This document shows positions 27,384 to 47,458 of a stretch of DNA of 64,000 bases, piece by piece. The notes below the pieces were generated by a model, which searched no databases, was not told where the DNA came from, and worked only from the letters and a program-made list of their open reading frames with translations. Every line of letters begins with the position of its first letter. Within the stretch, counting starts at the first letter, position 1. This stretch comes from Salpingoeca rosetta (Eukaryota > Protista > Choanoflagellata): positions 852,335 through 916,334 of the forward strand of contig JAWQFM010000015.1 of assembly GCA_033442325.1 (NCBI GenBank), in the 5' to 3' direction. Made by a program: the position numbers and the translations under genes.

Positions 27384-33597
<6,214 letters not shown>

Positions 33598-35946: not shown

Positions 35947-36304
35947 TGTGTGTCTGCTTGCTTGTTGTGCTGGACGCGTGGTTACATTCGACGACTCTGG
36001 TCCCTCCGCGTCGCTGTTGCTTCCCTTCTCGTCTTCAAGCCTCCAGCCAGTGGCGATTTTGTGCAATTCCCATGAATTATACGAATGTTATGTAAAATTT
36101 CGGTAGCTTTTCCTCCTCCAACAAATGAGAAAAAAGCCGCATGCATCTACCCCTCCAACAACACCATCGCCATCATCACAAACAACACGGAAGCACCTTC
36201 ACATATCGCCCCCCCCCCCCAACTTGTTGGAGAGAGCTGTGCGTGTGCGTGCGAGTTGTTGAGTGCTGCAACCACTAGGGAGGCGGTAGAAGAATAGAGC
36301 AACC

Positions 36305-36501
36305 ATGGGAACGCTGTGGCGGTCGCAGGAGATGGGGAGGGCCAAGCTGTTTGTGCCCTCCGAGGTCTCGTACGAGGTCGTCAGCGCCCTCGGCGACATT
36401 GGCCTTGTCCAGTTCATCGACGTGCGTTGCTGAGTTTGTGGCTCTGTGTGTGTGTGCATGTGTGTGTGTGTGTGCGTGTTCGTGTGTTTGCATGTGTGTG
36501 T

Positions 36502-36554
<53 letters not shown>

Positions 36555-39500
36555 CGCTCGTGTGTGTGTGTGTGTGTTTGCATGTTTATGTGTGTGTGTG
36601 TGCGCGCGCGTGTGCTGCTCCGTCTCCCCGTCTCTATCTGTCTCTCCCTCCCTCCCTCTTCTATCCATCCATCTATGTATCTATCCATCTATCTATCCAT
36701 CCATCCATCTATCCATCTATCTGTCTCTCTGTCTCTCCTCTTGCCTTTGTTTCTTTATTGCATCCCATGTCTTGCGGGGACTGACGCATGCCCCCTCGTT
36801 CATGACGTGCAGGCCAACCCGGACCTGAACGCGTTCCAGCGCAAGTTTGTGAACGAGGTTCGCCGCTGCGATGAGATGGAGCGCAAGCTGCGCTTCTTCG
36901 AGTCCGAGATTGAGAAGCTGAAGCTGGAGATCAACGGTGCCGAGGAAGCTGCAAGCATGCCCGCTCCCGACATGAAGGGCATGCACAGCATGGAGGCAGA
37001 GTTTGACAGACTCGAGCGCGAGGTGTGTGTGTGTGTGTGTGATGGTGTGTCTGACTGCTTTTGATTATGTGGTTGCATGATGGTGTTGTGTTGTTGCTTG
37101 TTCACCATTGTGTGTACGTGCGTGCTGTGTGTTCTGTGTTGCGCGACTTTGAACTGTTGGGCTAGCGTGTTGTGAGCCCGTATCGTTGTGCAAGCCCTTG
37201 CTTCCCTCCATAGAACACACCTGCATTAACACATACCATCTCTTCCAACCCACCCACCACACCACCTCAATGCCAACAGATGAAGGAGATCAACAACAAC
37301 GAGCAGGTGCTCAAGAAGCAGAACCTGGAGCTCACGGAGCTGCACGAGATTCTCAACCGCACTGCCATGTTCTTCGACGAGGCAGAGAGCGCAACAGCCG
37401 CCCTGTCCGCGGACACTGCAGAGTGAGTTGTATTGGGAAGAAAAGAGATGAGGGGAGACGGGGAAGCAAGTAGGAAGGGTGGAGAGATGTTGGAGGAGGG
37501 GGGCCGGAAGAAAACGGGAGAGAGCGGCAAAAGTTGGGGGGGGGTTGTCGGTAGGCCTGACCGTGTGGCCCGTGTGTTGGATGAGCTGTGCTTGAAGCAG
37601 AACACACATACATTTGCCTTTGATTTTGTTGCTCCTCTCTCCTTGTCCCTTCGACCGTGCACCGTGCCCTCACCTCCTTGGCTGCTTGTCCTCATCATCC
37701 CGCCTCACCTGCACCAGCTCCTCCAACACGCCGCTGCTTGAGGCTGACGAGCGCTCCGGGCAGCTTGCGTTTGTGACGGGTGTGATTGCGCGCGAGCGTG
37801 TGCCCGGCTTTGAGCGCCTGCTGTGGCGCGCGTGCCGCGGTAACGTGTTCCTGCGTCGCGTGCCCATTGACGAACCCGTGCACGACCCGACAACTGGCGA
37901 CGAGATCCACAAGGAGGTCTTCATCGTCTTCTACCAGGGTGAACAGCTCGGCAACCGCGTCAAGAAGATCTGCGAGGGGTAAGCAGGCGGGGGGGGACGA
38001 TTAAGTGTGGCTATGCATGTGCAAGAGGTGTGGGTGTGTGTGAAGAGGTGTGTGGGTGTGTGTGAAGAGGTGTGTGCGCGCGCATGCATTGGTAAGTGAG
38101 TGTGCGGCACGTTGTGCCCTCTCTCCCTTTCCCCCAAACACACACACGCACGCACACAATGAACACATTTCTGCTCACACGCGCATTCCACATGTGCTGG
38201 GTGGCGATGCAGGTATGATGCGACCATCTACCCGTGCCCAAACCTTCCCTCCAAGCGCCGTGAGCTTCGCGAGGGCGTCAAGACCCGTATCCTCGACCTC
38301 CAGAACGTAAGCAGGTTTGCATGACACAGCGAGCCACACCATCCGCCTCCCTTGGCGCGCGTTTTCCTCCCCATTTCTTCGTTTCTGTTGCCATTTTTCT
38401 TTCTCTGGTGCCGTTTCTTTATCCCTTCGCCTTCCCCTCCTGGTCCATCCCCATCCTTTGTTGTCACCGCTCTCCACCTTCATGGCGCGGCCACACCGTA
38501 CCGTGTGCTGTGAATATGATTCCACTTCTGAGCGAACACCAAACGTTCTGCTGGTTCTACTGTACTGTGTGCACTTGATTGCTCTCTTCCCCACGTGCTT
38601 GCACAGCCCAAGTAACTCGCAACACCTCCTCCTCCTGCGTTATCTCAATGGCATTCTTTTCTTTCTTTTTTTTTTTTTTTGCACTTGTATTCCTTCCTTT
38701 TGCTCCCCCGTTGCCATCTCCAACGTCATGCCAATCCTCCCCTCTGTTCTCATTGCTATCACATCACCACCACCGTCGTCGCTGCTGTCGCCACCACTTT
38801 GACCCTCATCACCACCATCAACACCATCTGCGAACACATCAGGTGCTGCACCGCACGGAAGACCACCGCCGGCACGTGTTGTCCACCATTGCCTTCAAGC
38901 TCGGCGGCTGGATTGTCCAGGTCAAGAAGATCAAGGCAATCTTCCACACCATGAACAAGTTCAACGTCGATGGCACTCGCAAGGTACAGCTCGTGTGGTG
39001 ATGCACTGGGTGTGGTGTGTGTGCGCGCGCGCGTAGTTACGCATGCGCTGCTTGTTTTTCTGTTTTGCTGCTGTTGAATCCCATTTCATGTTACCAGCTC
39101 CCGTCCATCCATCGCTATGTTCCCATCCCCACCTTACACCATCCCCTCACTCCCACACCATCACACACCACCATATGCACACAGAGCCTGATTGCGGAGG
39201 TGTGGTATCCGCTTGCGCGCGTTGATGAGATTCAGCATGCGCTGCGCGTGGGCACGTCCCGCGCCGGCAGCGACATGCAGGCCATCCTTAACGACATTCC
39301 CCACGACAGCAAGCCCCCGACGGCCTACTTCACCACCAAGTTCACACGCGGGTTCCAGTCCATTGTCGATGCGTACGGTGTTGCAACATACCGCGAGGTC
39401 AACCCAGGTGCGTCCAAAGCAGGGTGTTACGTGAATAGTCGTGGTGTTGGTGGTGTTGGTGTGCGTATGTGTTTGGCGTGTGCGTGTGTGTTTGAGTTGC

Positions 39501-41024
39501 ATGATTGATGTGCGCGCGTTTTCTTTCTCATAAACTCTCTCTTTGTTATGTTGTTATGTTTCACGCCCTCATCCCATTTCCACATACAACACATGTTCAC
39601 GCGTCGTCGCATGTCGTGCGTGTTTGCATGTGCAGGTCCCTTTACCATCATCACCTTCCCGTTTCTGTTTGCGGTGATGTTTGGCGACCTCGGCCACGGC
39701 TTCCTGATGATGCTTGTCGCGCTTATGCTCGTCCTCAAGGAGAAGTCGCTCAAGAACTTTGACGGCGGCGAGATTTGGGACACCATGTTCAACGGCCGTT
39801 ACATCATCCTCCTCATGGGCCTCTTCTCCATGTACACCGGCTTTGTCTACAATGACATCTTCTCAAAGGCCCTCTCCTTTGGCAGCGGGTGCGTTGGTGC
39901 TTTCTGTGTTGTGTTGTGTGTTTGTGTGTGTGGTTGCGTGTGTGCGTGTCTGTGAAAGTTGGTGTGTGTGCAAGTGTGTGTGAGTGTGAGTGAGGATGTC
40001 ATTCACTCTTTCTTTTCTTTTTCTTTTTTTGCTGTTTTGTTGGCGTTGTTGCAAACCGTCCTCCCTCGTCATCTTGTCTTCACGCGAGTGTCATTCCATA
40101 CGTTACTCACCGTCCCTCAAACCTGCTGTTCCTGTAACGCTGCCGTTCCTGTAACCCCCCCCCCCCGGCCCTTCGTCCCATTGATTGGCAGGTGGTCCAT
40201 CTCTGAAGAGGAGATTCCCATGAACATCACTGGCAGCGCCACGCTTGAGCTTCGCGCTCCTTACCTTGATCTGAACGGCACGCTTCACAATGGCGACCTC
40301 AGGCACGCGTACGCCTTTGGCATCGACCCCGTACGTACCGCATCTTACTGCTTTGCGTGGGCGTGTGTGTGCGTGCGTGTGTGTGTGTGTGTGTTGTGCT
40401 GCTCGTGTGCGTGTGTATGAGTGTGTGTATGTGCTTTTGCAGGTTGTAGTCCAAGTTGTTGTGTTTCTGTGCACTCGCCCCATACATTGCCCTGCTCTGG
40501 CGTTTCAACTCACCGTGCATCGCATTCATGCCACCCTGCACCCCCGTGCTACAAACTCCTCAGATGTGGCAAGTCTCCGAGAACAAGCTGACGTTTACCA
40601 ACTCGTACAAGATGAAGCTCTCCGTCATCCTCGGCGTCCTTCAGATGCTCTTTGGTGTCGTCCTCAGCCTCTTCAACCACAGGTGCGCGTGTTTGCGCTG
40701 AGATGTCACTGGGGTGCCGAAGGTTGAGCGCACTATGTGGGCGCAGTATTTGCTGTCTTTTTTTTTTGGGGGGGGGGGGCTGCGTCTCTGTGAACCATTT
40801 TGTCCTGACCTCGAGCATGACCCTGTGTGGTGTTGATGCCGCTGCTGCCGCTGCTGCGGACAACAGGTTCTTCAAGAAGTCGCTTCGCATCTGGCACGAG
40901 TTCATCCCGCAAACGCTCTTCCTCAGCTGCATCTTCGGTGCGTTGCGTGTCTTTTGACTATTTCCTGGCGGGTTTTGTGACCTTGTCTCCTTAAACTGCC
41001 TTATTTTTATTTATTTTTATTTTT

Positions 41025-41065
<41 letters not shown>

Positions 41066-43326
41066 GCTTTGTTGCTCGCATCTTGCTTTATCGCACGTGT
41101 CATCCTCATTGCTCACACTTCCATGCCATCATCATTCATCGCTTCTTCTTCCCTCATCCTCGTCACCACCGCCACCGCTACCATCGTCATGACCATCGCC
41201 GCCGCGCAGGCTATCTTGTGATTTGCATTCTGTACAAGTGGTCGACGCCGCTGGACGATTTCCCCAACCAGAGCGCGCCCTCGCTGCTGATTATGCTCAT
41301 CAACATGTTCCTCCGCTTTGGTCTGCCCCCGCCCAAGGAGCAGGTCCTCTACGGCGACAAGGTGTGTGCGTGTGTGCGTGTGTGCGTGCGTGTGTGTGTG
41401 TATCTTTGCTTGCAGCACGTGTTTTTGTTGTTGCATCATGCATTGGTACACCTTCATCTCACTCGTCGCTGTCGTCCGCACTGCGTTGTTTCTTTCTGCT
41501 TCCATGTCTCTGTTTTGCAGGAGGGTAACCTGCAAGGCAAGGTGCAGATGGCGCTCGTTGTGATTGCGGTGGTGTGCGTCCCCTGGATGCTCCTTACCCG
41601 GCCCCTCATCCTCCGATCACGCCAGAAGCGCCGCGAACGCGAGGGTAAGACAAAATCACCACCTGCTGCCTTGCACGCCTGTTGGCTGCCACACTGTCCG
41701 AGAGCCTTCTCTTTTCCTTCTCTTGTTCCTTTTGCTTCTTCTTCTTCCTCTTCCACTTCTTCCACCCTCTCTTCATTGCTTTCCTTTCCTTGCTTCATTT
41801 CTTTCTTCCCCACATCTCTTTCTCTTTTCTCTTCGCCTTCCCCTCCTGGCCCATCCCCATCCTTTGTTGTCACCGCTCTCCACCTTCATGGCGCGGCCAC
41901 ACCGTGCCGTGTGCTGTGAATATGATTCCACTTCTGAGCGAACACCAAACGTTCTGCTGGTTCTACTGTACTGTGTGCACTTGATTGCTCTCTTCCCCAC
42001 GTGCTTGCACAGCCCAAGTAACTCGCAACACCTTCTTGTTGTTCTTGTCCTCAAACGCCCTTGTTCTTCTTCCCTCTCCGTTCTTCTTCCGTCTTCCCCT
42101 CTATTATCGTTTTCTTCTTTTGGACCTGTTGCTTGCATGTGCAAGTGCTTTTGGGTCTGCAAGCAGCCAAGCCAGGCGTCCTTGTTTTGTAGCGTTGCAT
42201 GTGTGTTAACTTGTTGCGCCCTTTTGTTTTGCATTCGATAGCTGAAGCCCGTGTGCGTGCAGGCATGCTGCAGGGAAGCGACGACGACCACGACGATGGC
42301 CATGGCGACGAAGAGGTGTGTGTGTGTGTGTGTGCGTGGGTGTGGGTGTGTGTGTGTGTGCGTGTGTACGCGGGTGATGACTGCCGCTTTGTCATTGCTC
42401 GTCTTGTTCAGCAACTCACTCTCGACGTGCCTCCCATTCTTGCATCAGCACTCGTTTGGCGAGATGATGGTGCACCAGGCCATCCACACGATTGAGTTTT
42501 GCCTTGGCTGCATCTCCAACACGGCGTCATACCTTCGCCTGTGGGCCCTGTCGCTTGCGCACGCCCAGCTGTCCGAGGTGCTGTGGGACATGGTGCTGCA
42601 CAACGGCTTTACCAGCTGGTACCTCCTCTTTTGCGCATTTGCCGTCTGGGCCGTCCTCACCATTGGCGTTCTCCTCATCATGGAGGTGCGTGCGTGTGGA
42701 TGATATGTGTGTGTGCGCATGTGTGCGTGTGCGTGCTTGTGTGTGCGTGTGAATGATATGTGTGTGCGTGTGTGTTCGTGTGGGTGGGTGTGCGTGCGTG
42801 CTTGTGGGTTCGGATAATGACGTTTTCGTGTGTATGCTGAACCCATTTGACTGCTCTGTTGACGCTGCTTGGTGGGAACGGGGACAACCAACCCCCCCCC
42901 CCCCTTCCCCCCAAACCTCCATCCATACGACATTCACACATGCACATTGTTTCTGTATCCATCTCCTCCTCCTCCCCCCCCCTCCTCTTCCTCCTCCTTC
43001 CCTCCACCAAACAGGGCTTGTCTGCGTTCCTGCACGCGTTGCGTCTGCACTGGGTCGAGTTCCAGAACAAGTTCTACGATGGCAACGGCTATCTCTTCAC
43101 CCCCTTCCACTTTGAGTGCGTTGTCTCGCGTGTGCAGCGAGTTGCGTGCTGTTTGGGAAGCTTCTCTCTGCGTCCCCCCCCCCTGCCCCATGTTCCACTG
43201 CCACATGCTCGCACTCCTCTCACCTCATGTTTTCTGTTCGTGTCGTGAATTGATTGAAATGCCACCATTTTTTGTTTATTTTTTTGCAGGCGCGTGCTCA
43301 AGGGCCAGGATGATGACGCAGCGTAG
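36305..43326 (+). CDS. ATP6V0A: V-type proton ATPase V0 subunit a (Vph1/ATP6V0A family), many exons
   Basis: [125 protein letters not shown] (essential Arg present), [21 protein letters not shown]. Confidence 0.98.
38425..38627 (+). repeat. Intronic 203-bp element, copy 1 (candidate structured ncRNA or short mobile element)
   Basis: Identical to 41831-42033 except for 2 substitutions; lies inside V-ATPase intron 38307-38842. Confidence 0.9.
41831..42033 (+). repeat. Intronic 203-bp element, copy 2
   Basis: Direct repeat of 38425-38627; lies inside V-ATPase intron about 41645-42241. Confidence 0.9.
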
Positions 43327-43561
43327 ACGAGTGGCCCTCTTTTAGTTTCTCTTTTGTCTTGCCTCCCCAGCACACACCTCCACACACTTTCGCCTCGGCG
43401 CTGTTGGCTACGTGCCATGCACACACACACATGCACACACATGCATACACTCATACGCCCACACATGATGTTCCCCTTTCCTTTGTGTTTATGTTTGTTC
43501 TGAGACTACGAAGACCTGAGACTCTCCCTCCCCACACCTGTGTCAACAACAACATGTTCGC

Positions 43562-43620
<59 letters not shown>

Positions 43621-43909
43621 CCAAACACTGTGCTCACTCAAGTAAACTACCCACACCTCGATCAGCGCGTCAAAAGACGTGAAGGGCCGGGGCTTGCCAC
43701 CGCCGACGCGACACGACAGACAGAAAAGTTTGACAAAGTTCTGAAGAGTGGGCATATCTTCAAGAAATAATCGCAATAATGACGACACCATTTATGCCTT
43801 TGTTCTTCACGGTGGCGGCGTTGTGCGAACACACCACACACCAACAATAACAACCCTCTCCCTCCTCCCCCTTCCCCCCCCCCCACACACACACGTCAAC
43901 CGGTGCAGG

Positions 43910-44302
43910 ATGATGCTGGGGCGGCGCATCACTGGGATGATTGGCGCAGTGCTGCTGGTGTCGCTGCTGGTGAATGGGCTCATGTATGCGCGGCACTGGC
44001 AGTCCACGACCGCGTCGCCAGTTCACGAGAGCGCCCTTGAGCATGCACGACGGCAAGCTGAGGAGCAGCAGGATCGTGCACAGGACGCGCTCCTGGCAAA
44101 AGCCGACCTGGAGAAGAAGCACGAGGACGCGCTCAAGGCGCTCGAGGCCGAACGCCAACGCCACGAGAACGAGATCCAGCAGCTCAAGGACAAAATTGAA
44201 CACATCCACGACAACCACGACCAACAACAGCAGCAACGCGACAATGATGAGCAGCAACACAACAACAACCAGCAGCAGCACCACAACAACAACAACTACC
44301 AA

Positions 44303-44346
<44 letters not shown>

Positions 44347-47300
44347 CCAGAGCAACGAGGAAAGGCACAGTGAGAACGAGAAAAGACACAGTGAGAACGA
44401 CAACTTGCCAGGCGCCGTGCGCAGGGTGTTTGACGATCGGGCGGGAACATGCAAAGCAGAGACCAAGATTGTGTACGTCAAGACACACAAGACCGGGTCC
44501 AGCACGCTCACCAACATCTTCCACCGCTTTGCGTATAAGCACAGCCTCAAGGTGGTGCTGCCCAAGAGCAACGTCTTCCTCGGGTGGCCACGCAGCGCGG
44601 GCATCCCCACCTCGTACGTGCCGCTGCCCGGCGCAGAGGGCAACTACGACATCTTCTGCTCCGCACACACGCGCTACAGCCGCAAGTACATTGAGCCCAT
44701 CGTGCCCAACGCCAAGTACATCACCATCTTTCGCGAGCCCACCTCACACTTCAAGTCGTCGTGGAGCTACTGGAACGTGCCCTCGCACATCAAGCGCGTC
44801 TCCGGCATGAGCGTGACGATGGAGGAGTTCCTGAAGGACCCGGAGACGTGGTTCCCGCGCGGGCTCAAGGGCGACAGGGACCTGCTGCACAACAGCTTTG
44901 CCTTTGACTTTGGGTTTGATCACACGTACACGCAGGCGGAGGTGGACAAGCTCATCGCGCACCTGGACACGTTCGCCCTCGTGCTCATCACGGAGTACAT
45001 GGACGAGAGCCTGGTGCTGATGAAGCGCAAACTGTGCTGGGAGCTGGAGGACGTGGTGTACTTTGCCCTCAAGGTGAACAAGCGCAAGCCGAAGAAGTCG
45101 CTGCCCGCAGACGTGCGTGAGCGCATCCTCAAGCTCAACTGGGTGGACGCGCAGCTGTACGACCACTTCAACAAGACGCTGTGGAGGGAGATTGCGCAGG
45201 AGAAGAACTTTGCGGAGGAGGTGGCGGCCTTCAAGCAGCTCAAGGAGCAGCTGTCCACGCAGTGCGAGCGCTGGGCCACGTGGAACGAGGACCAGCACCG
45301 CAAAGCGCTCTTGGAGGAGGAGGGGAAGCCGCTGCCGCCCAAGCAGAAGCAGTGCCACCTGGCGCAGATGGACAGCGTCGGCTTTGTCAAGTTTCTCAAG
45401 CAGATTGCGGGCGTCCCCGACAAGGAGTGCAGCACGCAGGGCCAGCCCAAGAAGAAGATTGTCTATGTCAAGACGCACAAAACTGGCTCGAGCACGCTTA
45501 CCAACCTGCTGCACCGCTACGTCCACAAGTACAACCTGCGGCCCGTCCTGCCCAAGAACGACATCTTCCTGGGCTACCCGAACAAGGAGGCCCTCATGTC
45601 CTCGTACGTCAAGCTGCCGCCCGTGCACGGCAAGGACGAGTACGACGTGCTGTGCAGCGCGCACTCCATCTACGACCGCCCGCGCATGGACAAGCTCGTG
45701 CCCAACGCCGCCTACATCACCGTGCTGCGCGACCCGGCCACCCAGTTTCTGTCGTCGTGGAAGTACTGGCACGTGACAGACCACATCAAGTCGCGCACGG
45801 GCAAGGACGTGACGCTGGAGGAGTTTGTGGACAACCCAAACGCGTACCGGCAGTACCTGTCCGAGGGCGACCATCGCCTCATCCACAACTCGATGGCGGT
45901 GGACCTGGGCCTGTCCAGCTCGCCGACGCGGGAGGAGGTGGAGACGCTCGTGCGCGACCTCAACTACCACTTTGACATGGTGATCATCACGGAGTACTTT
46001 GACGAGTCGCTCATCATGCTGCGGCGGCAGCTGTGCTGGGAGAAGGAGGACATCCTGTACCTCTCGCTCAAGGTCAGCAAGCAGTCGAAGAAGGGCGGAT
46101 ACGAGGTGCCGGCTGCCTTCCGCGCCAAGGTTGCGCAGTACAACTGGGCAGACGCGCGGCTGTACGACGCGCTGAACCAGACGCTGTGGTACCGCGTGCG
46201 CCACGCCATTGGCTTCCAGCAGGAGCTCGACTGGCTGCGGCAGGAGAAGGAGCGCATTGCGGACCTGTGCCAGCCGTTCACCACCATGGGCGACAACATG
46301 CACCGCAAGGCCGTCATGGAGCACCCGGACAGCGTGGACGAGGACGAGCAGCTGTGCCACCTCATGATGCTCGACTCGCCAGGCTTTGTCAAGATGCTCA
46401 AGGCAAAGTACGGCAAGGCGGACCAGGAGTGCCACAACCAGCCGCGCGATCCACGCTCCATCGTGCTCTCCTCCGTGCTGCGCACACCGCCGGGCCTGGC
46501 CATTGCACGCGTGGCGCAGCGCATGCAGCTCACGCGGCCAACGCGCACCGTCGTCGCTGCCGAGGGCGTGACCAGCATCGGGTGGCCCGAACACGCCACG
46601 ACGGAGGCCGACCTGAAGGCGCGCGTATGGAACAGCGGGTCGCGCGGGCCGGGCACGTTTGTCGGCGTGGATGTGCCGCTGAACAAGAAGCTGCTTGCCT
46701 CTGTTGTGCACAACCCGTACATTGTGATTGTGGTGGCCAACCCCACGGTGACGCTGGCGACGGTGTGGGACGAGCTGGGCGCGGGCGATGTGCTGCGCGA
46801 GGCGACTGGTGGTGATGTGTCGTTTGCCGACTACGTGCGCAGCCCATCGACATATGCCTCGCACCTCGACTCCACCACGGTGGCCCGGCTGAAGAACCCG
46901 CTGGCCCGTGCGCTCGGGTACAATGGCGACGGCAGGCGGTCGAGCGTGAACACGTTTCTGCGCGACCTGACCAAGGAGGTGGGCACGTTTCTGATTGGCG
47001 ACCACTTTTACGAGTCTGTAGTGCACTTCCGCCGCGTGTTCTGCCTGCCGAGCGACGCGTTTGTGGTGGAGGAGCCCGAATTGCCGCCACACGTGGAGGA
47101 GGACTGCAAGGACAGGACGGTGATGAAGGCCGTGGAGGCGCACAGCCCTGTTGACGCAACCATCTTCAGCACGCTCAACTCGACGTTCTTCCGACGGCTG
47201 CAACGGGAGGTGCTGCTGGAGAGCGAGATCAGTCAGGTGAAGAAGCACACCGCGTCTTTCGAGAAGGACTGCGCATACATGAAGCTTGACATTCACCAGC

Positions 47301-47458
47301 GACACGACGACGCCTTGAGCATGCTGACCGGTGCTGGTGCTGCTGGTGCTGCTGGTGCTGCTGGTGGAGGTTCGAAGCCGACGACGCAGCAGAAGCGGTG
47401 TGTTGCGATGGGGTTGAACATGCAGGAGCTTGACGAGGCAATCAGGAAACGGCACTAG
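43910..47458 (+). CDS. Galactose-3-O-sulfotransferase-like type II membrane protein with three tandem sulfotransferase domains (third degenerate); single coding exon
   Basis: N-terminal signal anchor (MIGAVLLVSLLVNGLMY), coiled-coil/polyQ stem, two copies of the 5'-PSB motif YVKTHKTGSSTLTN (about 44470 and 45460), 3'-PB motifs FREPTSHFKSSWSY and LRDPATQFLSSWKY, ITEYxDESL motifs; a third colinear but diverged copy from about 46455. Confidence 0.9.

What the first reader, a model, noticed from the sequence alone, without database searches (positions are those of the whole stretch)
38425..42033. 203-bp structured element duplicated in two different introns of the V-ATPase a gene (candidate intronic H/ACA-like RNA or new short mobile element)
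Seen: 38425-38627 and 41831-42033 differ at only 2 of 203 positions, while their flanks are unrelated. The exons on each side join in frame without it, so it is not needed as coding sequence. Both host introns are long, pyrimidine-rich and lack the (TG)n tracts found in most other introns. By eye it folds into an 11-bp stem with G-U pairs (TTCATGGCGCG/TGTGCTGTGAA; one of the two substitutions falls in its loop), followed by ATATGA (fits box H, ANANNA), two further stems (AGCGAAC/GTTCTGCT and CTGTGTGCAC/GTGCTTGCACAG), and identity ends at ACA+3 nt (ACACCT), which is where H/ACA RNAs end. Known: snoRNAs are often duplicated between introns of one housekeeping host gene. Inference: an unannotated intron-encoded RNA; alternatives are a young SINE/MITE or a local misassembly. 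Hairpin sizes are atypical for a canonical H/ACA RNA and I found no rRNA target.
Basis: partly seen in the sequence, partly recalled or inferred. Interest (0 to 1): 0.75.

Follow-up and report, generated by a model that had tools for sequence, protein, structure and literature searches.

The report
Twin intronic H/ACA snoRNA candidates
Two introns of the V-ATPase a-subunit gene of the choanoflagellate Salpingoeca rosetta each carry a near-identical 203-base block whose last 160 bases fold like a textbook box H/ACA small nucleolar RNA, so this is most likely an ordinary, recently duplicated and so far unannotated guide-RNA gene, not a mobile element.

Summary
Window 38425-38627 and 41831-42033 differ at 2 of 203 positions, and their flanks show no homology. 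Both blocks lie sense-strand in introns 5 and 13 of the S. rosetta V-ATPase a gene. They are the only two copies in the 55 Mb assembly, by BLAST and by covariance model.

The unconstrained minimum-energy fold of the last 160 nt is a canonical H/ACA layout:
- hairpin 1 with a 7/10-nt pocket;
- H box ACACCA (not ATATGA);
- hairpin 2, whose 9/8-nt pocket requires opening a 4-bp helix;
- ACA, then 3 nt, then the end of identity.

The upper stems lie 16 and 15 nt from the boxes (the rule is 14-16). A simple grammar for this layout hits about 5e-4 of ACA triplets in this genome. An anchored chance match is therefore about 1-4e-4.

Several things remain unshown. There are no expression data, no Rfam family match and no relative to compare. 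No rRNA or snRNA target beats shuffled guides; the best is LSU U1292, with 7+4 pairs. SINE/MITE, snoRNA-retroposon and C/D readings fail their defining tests.

Verdict: a probable new lineage-specific H/ACA snoRNA with a young duplication within one host gene. This is a known kind of event, and other notes of this scan report similar snoRNA pairs elsewhere in this genome.

The parts
36305..43326 (+). Host gene: V-ATPase subunit a (S. rosetta Atp6v0a1, 831 aa)
   Evidence: Exon-wise Pfam PF01496 hits are collinear along the profile. Public protein P0170 maps exon by exon. The NCBI gene span is at the same coordinates.
38306..38842 (+). Host intron 5 (537 nt), GTAAGC...CAG
   Evidence: Exon frames join as ...LQN|[10 protein letters not shown], as in P0170.
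38425..38627 (+). Duplicated block, copy 1 (203 nt)
38425..38467 (+). 43-nt leader, 82% pyrimidine, inside the duplicated block but outside the predicted RNA fold
   Evidence: Carries one of the two substitutions (38444).
38468..38534 (+). Copy 1 hairpin 1: lower stem 38468-38472/38530-38534, pocket 38473-38479 and 38520-38529, upper stem 38480-38519
   Evidence: Unconstrained MFE of the 160-nt core; grammar hit. The substitution at 38500 lies in the apical loop.
38536..38541 (+). Copy 1 H box ACACCA (ANANNA), 1 nt after hairpin 1 and 16 nt after the upper stem
38549..38621 (+). Copy 1 hairpin 2: lower stem 38549-38555/38615-38621, pocket 38556-38564 and 38607-38614 (a 4-bp TACT/AGTA helix can close part of it), upper stem 38565-38606
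38622..38624 (+). Copy 1 ACA box, directly after hairpin 2 and 15 nt after the upper stem. Identity between the copies ends 3 nt later (38627).
41645..42241 (+). Host intron 13 (597 nt), GTAAGA...TAG
   Evidence: Exon junction ...RERE|AEARV, as in P0170.
41831..42033 (+). Duplicated block, copy 2 (203 nt)
41874..42033 (+). Copy 2 predicted H/ACA RNA: hairpin 1 41874-41940, H box 41942-41947, hairpin 2 41955-42027, ACA 42028-42030
   Evidence: Same constrained fold energy as copy 1; grammar hit at 42028; CM R1 209.3 bits.

Best explanation
Each block contains a gene for a box H/ACA small nucleolar RNA of about 160 nt (window 38468-38627 and 41874-42033). The inferred pathway is as follows. The RNA is transcribed as part of the V-ATPase a pre-mRNA and released from introns 5 and 13 after splicing. 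It is then trimmed by exonucleases to the edges protected by the dyskerin/Nop10/Nhp2/Gar1 proteins, leaving ACA plus 3 nt at the 3' end. Its two internal-loop pockets would pair with a substrate RNA on both sides of a uridine and present that uridine to dyskerin for conversion to pseudouridine. The only target candidate that meets the natural minimal pairing rules in a conserved rRNA core is LSU rRNA U1292 (gaACUUGGG-U-A-UAGG) for the second pocket. The first pocket has no rRNA, U2 or U6 target and may be an orphan. The two copies arose by a very recent copying event, or by gene conversion, within the same host gene (1% divergence). Shown here: the sequence identity, copy number, intron location, sense orientation, fold and box geometry. 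Inferred: expression, processing, protein binding and target.
For: (1) The unconstrained MFE of the 160-nt core is hairpin (7/10-nt internal loop), hinge, hairpin, tail. Its energy is -42.8 kcal/mol, z = -2.1 against dinucleotide shuffles. The sense strand of the full block gives z = -2.2, the antisense strand z = -0.75.
(2) The H box ACACCA lies 1 nt after hairpin 1, and ACA directly follows hairpin 2. The upper stems end 16 and 15 nt before the boxes, within the conserved 14-16 nt rule quoted in PMC6800473.
(3) A generic H/ACA grammar finds only 4 sites on both strands of the 64-kb window, and two of them are the two copies. The background rate is 7.8 sites per 128 kb in shuffles. It is 9 sites per 400 kb, or 5.4e-4 per ACA, in 20 other pieces of this genome. 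A chance match anchored 3 nt from the end of an independently detected repeat is therefore about 1-4e-4.
(4) Identity between the copies ends exactly at ACA+3.
(5) Both copies are sense-strand in spliceosomal introns of a housekeeping gene.
(6) Both substitutions avoid stems, pockets and boxes: one is in the leader, one in the apical loop.
(7) A dyskerin gene is present in the genome.
(8) Duplication of snoRNAs between introns of one host gene ('cis-duplication') is a documented common process (PMC2653536).
Against: - No Rfam family matches the element, even at E<=10.
- No target is statistically convincing. The best bipartite pairings are reached by 62-85% of shuffled pockets. Hairpin 1 has no rRNA site that meets the minimal natural rules. 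Hairpin 2 has four such sites, while 52% of shuffled pockets have at least one. U2 and U6 give nothing.
- The pocket of hairpin 2 is partly closed by a 4-bp helix in the MFE.
- There is no evidence of expression, and no relative in which to test covariation. The covariance model finds nothing else in the genome or in the Monosiga brevicollis orthologue locus, whose gene is too compact to host such an RNA.
- With only 2 differences between the copies there is no information on selection.
- The 43-nt leader that was copied along is unexplained.
- I wrote the grammar after seeing the candidate, although its ranges are generic.
Confidence: 0.6

Rival explanations
1. Functionless young duplication. 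A 203-nt piece of one intron was copied into another intron 3.4 kb away, for example as templated filler DNA during break repair or by replication template switching. The H/ACA-like fold is a coincidence.
For: The copies are only 1% diverged, so nothing shows selection. There is no target above chance, no Rfam match, and no diverged older copies. The block includes 43 nt of plain pyrimidine-rich intron sequence that the RNA model does not need.
Against: The full double-hairpin, ANANNA, ACA layout with 14-16 nt spacing occurs at only about 2-6e-5 per position in this genome and in shuffles. Here it sits exactly 3 nt from the block's end, on the sense strand.
Confidence: 0.22
2. Another kind of structured intronic RNA or cis-element that merely resembles an H/ACA RNA. 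Examples would be a splicing-regulatory structure or a small-RNA precursor.
For: The sense-strand fold is moderately better than shuffles. The long, nearly perfect upper stems (15 and 12 bp) could serve other machineries. No guide target was found.
Against: No Rfam family of any type matches. The spacing of boxes and stems is specific to H/ACA RNAs. No CAB box (UGAG) occurs in the apical loops (direct reading of the sequence), and there is no C box.
Confidence: 0.1
3. Low-copy mobile element (SINE, MITE or snoRNA retroposon) that happened to land twice in one gene.
For: The boundaries are sharp with unrelated flanks. Short direct matches occur at the junctions (CC...CC at copy 1, TCT...TCT at copy 2).
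Against: There are exactly two copies in 55 Mb, by BLAST at E<=10 and by covariance model. There are no terminal inverted repeats, no tRNA-like part and no A-rich tail. The 2-3-nt junction matches are expected by chance in pyrimidine-rich sequence, whereas snoRNA retroposons carry an A-rich tail and a target-site duplication of about 14 bp (PMC1687206). Both copies lie 3.4 kb apart in the same gene and orientation.
Confidence: 0.04
4. Assembly artefact: only one copy exists in the real genome.
For: The only reachable public record is the same assembly (GL832969.1 of GCA_000188695.1, identical coordinates), so there is no independent confirmation.
Against: The copies differ at two positions. 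Each has unique sequence on both sides, and there are no gaps (N) within 8 kb. The exons of the host gene are complete and in order around both copies.
Confidence: 0.04

Closest known systems
Eukaryotic box H/ACA snoRNAs (pseudouridylation guides; no specific Rfam family)
   Same: Two hairpins with internal-loop pockets, an ANANNA hinge box and an ACA box directly after hairpin 2. The upper stems end 16 and 15 nt before the boxes. The element is intronic and on the sense strand in a housekeeping host gene.
   Different: It matches no curated family. No target is convincing. At 160 nt it is at the long end, because of its long upper stems. Expression has not been shown.
cis-duplicated snoRNA paralogues in different introns of one host gene (vertebrates, nematodes; PMC2653536)
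   Same: [quoted passage not shown]
   Different: The event here is very young (2/203 differences) and its limits are visible. It covers 43 nt of upstream intron plus the RNA, ends exactly at ACA+3, and involves no duplicated exon.
snoRNA retroposons (snoRTs) made by LINE-1 machinery (PMC1687206; PMC1802619)
   Same: The copied unit ends at the position expected for the mature 3' end of the RNA.
   Different: There is no A-rich tail and no target-site duplication of about 14 bp. The insertion is 3.4 kb away within the parental gene instead of at a distant locus.

Membership tests
Box H/ACA snoRNA | Two hairpins, each with an internal loop (pseudouridylation pocket) | tested here: met
   In the unconstrained MFE, hairpin 1 has a 7/10-nt loop. 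Hairpin 2 has a 3/4-nt loop that becomes 9/8 nt if a 4-bp TACT/AGTA helix opens. The constrained fold costs 4.2 kcal/mol.
Box H/ACA snoRNA | H box ANANNA in the hinge just after hairpin 1 | tested here: met
   ACACCA at 38536-38541 and 41942-41947, 1 nt after the lower stem.
Box H/ACA snoRNA | ACA box after hairpin 2, 3 nt from the mature 3' end | tested here: inconclusive
   ACA directly follows hairpin 2, and the inter-copy identity ends at ACA+3. The mature 3' end itself cannot be seen without RNA data.
Box H/ACA snoRNA | [quoted passage not shown] | tested here: met
   16 nt for hairpin 1 and 15 nt for hairpin 2.
Box H/ACA snoRNA | Bipartite guide complementarity (at least 8 bp, at least 3 per side) around a uridine of rRNA or snRNA | tested here: inconclusive
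   Hairpin 2 pairs with LSU U1292 by 7+4 pairs with 1 mismatch, which meets the minimal rules. However, 52% of shuffled pockets find such a site. Hairpin 1 has no site, and U2 and U6 give none.
Box H/ACA snoRNA | Stable RNA bound by dyskerin, Nop10, Nhp2 and Gar1 | not testable with these tools
   Only the presence of a dyskerin (DKCLD) gene in the genome was checked.
Box H/ACA snoRNA | Conservation or covariation in relatives | tested here: inconclusive
   No further match in the genome, in the M. brevicollis orthologue locus or in metagenome contigs. No close relative's genome was reachable.
Any curated Rfam family | Covariance-model score at or near the gathering threshold | tested here: not met
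   No relevant hit, even at E<=10 on a 201-nt query.
Box C/D snoRNA | C box RUGAUGA near the 5' end and D box CUGA near the 3' end | tested here: not met
   No RUGAUGA on either strand.
SINE / MITE | Many dispersed copies; terminal inverted repeats or a tRNA-like head with an A tail; target-site duplications | tested here: not met
   Two copies only. No inverted termini, no tRNA-like part, and only 2-3-nt junction matches.
snoRNA retroposon (snoRT) | A-rich tail and target-site duplication of about 14 bp (PMC1687206) | tested here: not met
   The flanks read ...tttatcc|block|cctcctcc... and ...cttttct|block|tcttgttg....

The most novel reading that the evidence does not exclude
The block may be a freshly caught copying event whose 3' limit is set by the RNA and not by the DNA. 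The copied unit ends exactly at the predicted mature 3' end (ACA+3). It carries a 43-nt untrimmed 5' extension, has no A tail and no target-site duplication, and landed in the same transcription unit. That pattern would fit a local, LINE-independent, RNA-templated mechanism, in which a 3'-matured, 5'-unprocessed snoRNP intermediate serves as repair template at its own gene. It could then be the route by which snoRNAs spread between introns of one host gene. The alternative for the same pattern is gene conversion between older paralogues, limited to their conserved part.
Probability: 0.1. Interest if true: 0.55.

Novelty: new member of a known kind. Interest (0 to 1): 0.3.

Why it matters
Choanoflagellates are the closest living relatives of animals, and I found no paper on their snoRNAs in the searchable library. 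Each well-supported candidate therefore helps to reconstruct the guide-RNA set and rRNA modification pattern at the root of animals. This one adds an unannotated, apparently lineage-specific H/ACA candidate. It also gives an unusually clean view of the limits of a very recent within-gene snoRNA duplication. The kind of gene and the kind of event are both well known, so the value is annotation and a small mechanistic hint, not a surprise.

Tried and rejected
- **Rfam.** I ran it at permissive thresholds on 9 kb and on 201 nt, and at gathering thresholds on the whole window. Nothing relevant was found.
- **More copies.** BLAST at E<=10 and covariance model R1 over the genome found none.
- **Orthologue.** The M. 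brevicollis V-ATPase a locus has no R1 match, and the gene spans only 2993 nt, leaving about 0.5 kb for all its introns together.
- **Metagenomes.** Two exact-pattern scans of metagenome contigs (guide plus box segments) gave 0 hits.
- **Targets.** Scans covered three rDNA copies, the ITS/5.8S region, U2 and U6, with fixed and flexible pockets. Nothing beat shuffled guides. U5 was not found by the genome search, so it was not scanned. U1 and U4 were not fetched.
- **Known pseudouridine at LSU U1292.** I tried to establish whether this uridine is a known pseudouridine elsewhere. A full-text search for the sequence context returned only papers that print it in DNA letters, apparently as primer sequences; I did not open them. 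My memory of yeast numbering was not reliable enough to use.
- **Residual flank homology** (old paralogues homogenised by conversion): none detectable.
- **Other classes.** tRNA-like SINE head: none. C/D boxes: none.
- **Independent assembly.** The public record is the same assembly.
- **Spliced protein.** Exons were searched one by one by reference, and the public protein P0170 returned by a tool was used for mapping.
Full report
**Observation.** The window holds two 203-nt blocks, 38425-38627 and 41831-42033, both on the + strand. They differ at two positions: 38444 T against 41850 C, and 38500 A against 41906 G. Identity stops abruptly on both sides. Local alignments of the remaining intron sequence score no better than dinucleotide shuffles: p = 0.11 upstream and 0.37 downstream, and 0.59 and 0.65 for the nearest 40 nt. 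There are no N within 36000-44000.

**Organism and host gene.** The window is scaffold GL832969.1 of the Salpingoeca rosetta assembly GCA_000188695.1. The public gene for 'Atp6v0a1 protein' (P0170, 831 aa) lies at exactly the window's genome coordinates.

Exon-sized open frames, searched one at a time by reference, hit Pfam V_ATPase_I (PF01496) collinearly from profile position 9 to 815. P0170 maps exon by exon.

- Copy 1 lies in intron 5 (38306-38842, GTAAGC...CAG). The exon junction reads ...LQN|[10 protein letters not shown].
- Copy 2 lies in intron 13 (41645-42241, GTAAGA...TAG). The exon junction reads ...RERE|AEARV.
- The blocks end 215 and 208 nt before the 3' splice sites.
- Frames that stay open through the blocks have no family match.

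**Copy number.** BLAST of the whole block and of its 3' 149 nt against the 55.4 Mb genome, at E up to 10, returns only the two copies. A covariance model of the predicted RNA (R1, 160 positions, 38 pairs) also returns only these two. ARAGORN finds no tRNA-like part, and no inverted repeat involves the block ends.

The junctions share only CC...CC (copy 1) and TCT...TCT (copy 2), with no A-rich tail. Mammalian snoRNA retroposons carry an A-rich tail and a target-site duplication of about 14 bp (PMC1687206). The mobile-element readings therefore fail their defining tests.

**Structure.** The unconstrained minimum-energy fold of the last 160 nt gives a different, canonical picture. Its energy is -42.8 kcal/mol, z = -2.1.

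| Feature | Element position |
|---|---|
| Hairpin 1 lower stem | 44-48 / 106-110 |
| Hairpin 1 internal loop | 49-55 and 96-105 |
| Hairpin 1 upper stem (15 bp) | 56-95 |
| Hinge, with ACACCA at 112-117 | 111-124 |
| Hairpin 2 lower stem | 125-131 / 191-197 |
| Hairpin 2 upper stem | 141-182 |
| ACA | 198-200 |
| Tail, then end of identity | 201-203 |

The pocket of hairpin 2 (132-140 and 183-190) is partly closed by a 4-bp helix in the free fold. Opening it, together with the other constraints, costs 4.2 kcal/mol.

The upper stems end 16 and 15 nt before the H and ACA boxes. The conserved distance is 14-16 nt (PMC6800473). The full block folds better than shuffles on the sense strand (z = -2.2, 1 of 200 shuffles) but not on the antisense strand (z = -0.75).

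**Is the architecture more than chance?** I wrote a generic H/ACA grammar with these requirements:
- an upper stem of at least 5 bp;
- pocket strands of 4-11 nt;
- a lower stem of at least 5 pairs with at most one mismatch;
- 14-16 nt to the box;
- ANANNA in the hinge, and ACA.

On both strands of the 64-kb window it hits four ACA sites. Two are the two copies; the others are at 30890 (+) and 26442 (-). Block-wise dinucleotide shuffles of the window give 7.8 sites per 128 kb. Twenty other 10-kb pieces of the genome give 9 sites in 400 kb of strand sequence, or 5.4e-4 per ACA.

The repeat was noticed for its duplication, not for its fold. The chance that such a site sits 2-4 nt from one of its ends is therefore about 1-4e-4. 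The grammar was written after I had seen the candidate, so this figure is somewhat optimistic, though the ranges used are broad and not tuned.

Both substitutions fall outside stems, pockets and boxes, one in the leader and one in an apical loop. By my own count about 41% of the block's positions are non-critical (derived from the fold, not computed by a tool). On that count, both substitutions would fall in such positions by chance with probability about 0.17, so this carries little weight.

**Targets.** I took rDNA copies, U2 and U6 from the same genome and scanned for bipartite pairing around a uridine.
- The best site for hairpin 2 is LSU U1292, in the conserved segment gaACUUGGG-U-A-UAGGggcgaaag. 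It forms 7 Watson-Crick pairs on the 3' side of the pocket. On the 5' side it forms 2 pairs, a mismatch, then 2 more pairs.
- This satisfies the minimal natural rules: at least 8 pairs, at least 3 per side, and the two pairs next to the uridine intact (PMC6800473).
- However, 62% of shuffled pockets reach the same score, and 52% find at least one rule-abiding site.
- Hairpin 1 has no such site in rRNA, and neither pocket fits U2 or U6.

The target therefore remains open. I could not establish whether LSU U1292 is pseudouridylated in any organism.

**Relatives.** The Monosiga brevicollis orthologue spans only 2993 nt for 834 codons and has no match to R1. Two exact scans of metagenome contigs found nothing. 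The other choanoflagellate homologues on record come from transcriptome collections or sit on contigs of 2.5-3.3 kb, about mRNA length for this protein, so I did not fetch them for intron comparison. No paper on choanoflagellate snoRNAs turned up. Covariation and conservation therefore could not be tested. A dyskerin gene is present in the genome.

**Interpretation.** The best reading (confidence about 0.6) is an unannotated, apparently lineage-specific intron-encoded box H/ACA snoRNA present as two gene copies. Copying between introns of one host gene is the commonest way snoRNA paralogues arise in vertebrates (PMC2653536). Other notes of this scan report similar snoRNA pairs and clusters in other S. 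rosetta host genes; I did not check those notes.

The main rival (about 0.22) is a functionless young duplication whose fold is a coincidence. Smaller rivals are another structured RNA (0.1), a low-copy mobile element (0.04) and an assembly artefact (0.04).

Two details stand out. The copied unit ends exactly at ACA+3, and it drags along 43 nt of pyrimidine-rich upstream intron. Two explanations fit. One is a copying mechanism whose 3' limit is set by the RNA. The other is gene conversion between older paralogues, confined to their conserved part. The absence of residual flank homology and of outgroup data leaves this undecided.

**Verdict.** This is a sound but ordinary new annotation: a new member of a known kind, of modest interest, pending RNA-level confirmation.

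Noticed in passing
window 30890 (+) and 26442 (-): Two further ACA sites satisfy my generic H/ACA grammar. This number is below the shuffle expectation (about 8 per 128 kb), and 30890 is antisense to the neighbouring DRC1-type gene. They are probably chance matches.
   Followed up: no
L005 (G000:C3:1880731-1888190), L006 (G000:C30:791402-798103), L007 (G000:C8:2017333-2024178): The LSU rRNA gene copies are not equivalent. The C30 copy matches the Rfam model over only 3702 nt. It stops aligning to the 4460-nt C3 copy after about 3.6 kb and lacks the sarcin-ricin motif there. The copies are 94-98% identical elsewhere. Possible causes are an insertion, a truncated unit or an assembly break.
   Followed up: partly
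window 43748-47458 (+): Immediately downstream of the V-ATPase a gene lies a single 1236-codon open frame with three repeats of a sulfotransferase-like module (IVYVKTHKTGSSTLTN... motif seen twice). It is also flagged by another first-stage note.
   Followed up: no
window 36400-36620, 37020-37050, 38020-38090, 39900-39990, 40350-40430, 41030-41065, 41365-41410, 42315-42370: Most introns of the host gene carry (TG)n / (GCGT)n-type microsatellites. The two introns that host the blocks are pyrimidine-rich instead and are the longest in the gene (537 and 597 nt, against about 125-370 nt for the others).
   Followed up: partly
L012 (M. brevicollis CH991549.1:792461-801453): The Monosiga brevicollis V-ATPase a gene spans 2993 nt, against 7022 nt in S. 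rosetta, for nearly the same protein length. Intron content of this gene therefore differs more than five-fold between the two choanoflagellates.
   Followed up: no
G000 whole genome: The Rfam U5 model (RF00020) gave no match in the genome search, although U2 (two copies on C13) and U6 (C9, partial model match 1-68) were found. This is most likely a sensitivity limit of the filtered search and not an absence.
   Followed up: no
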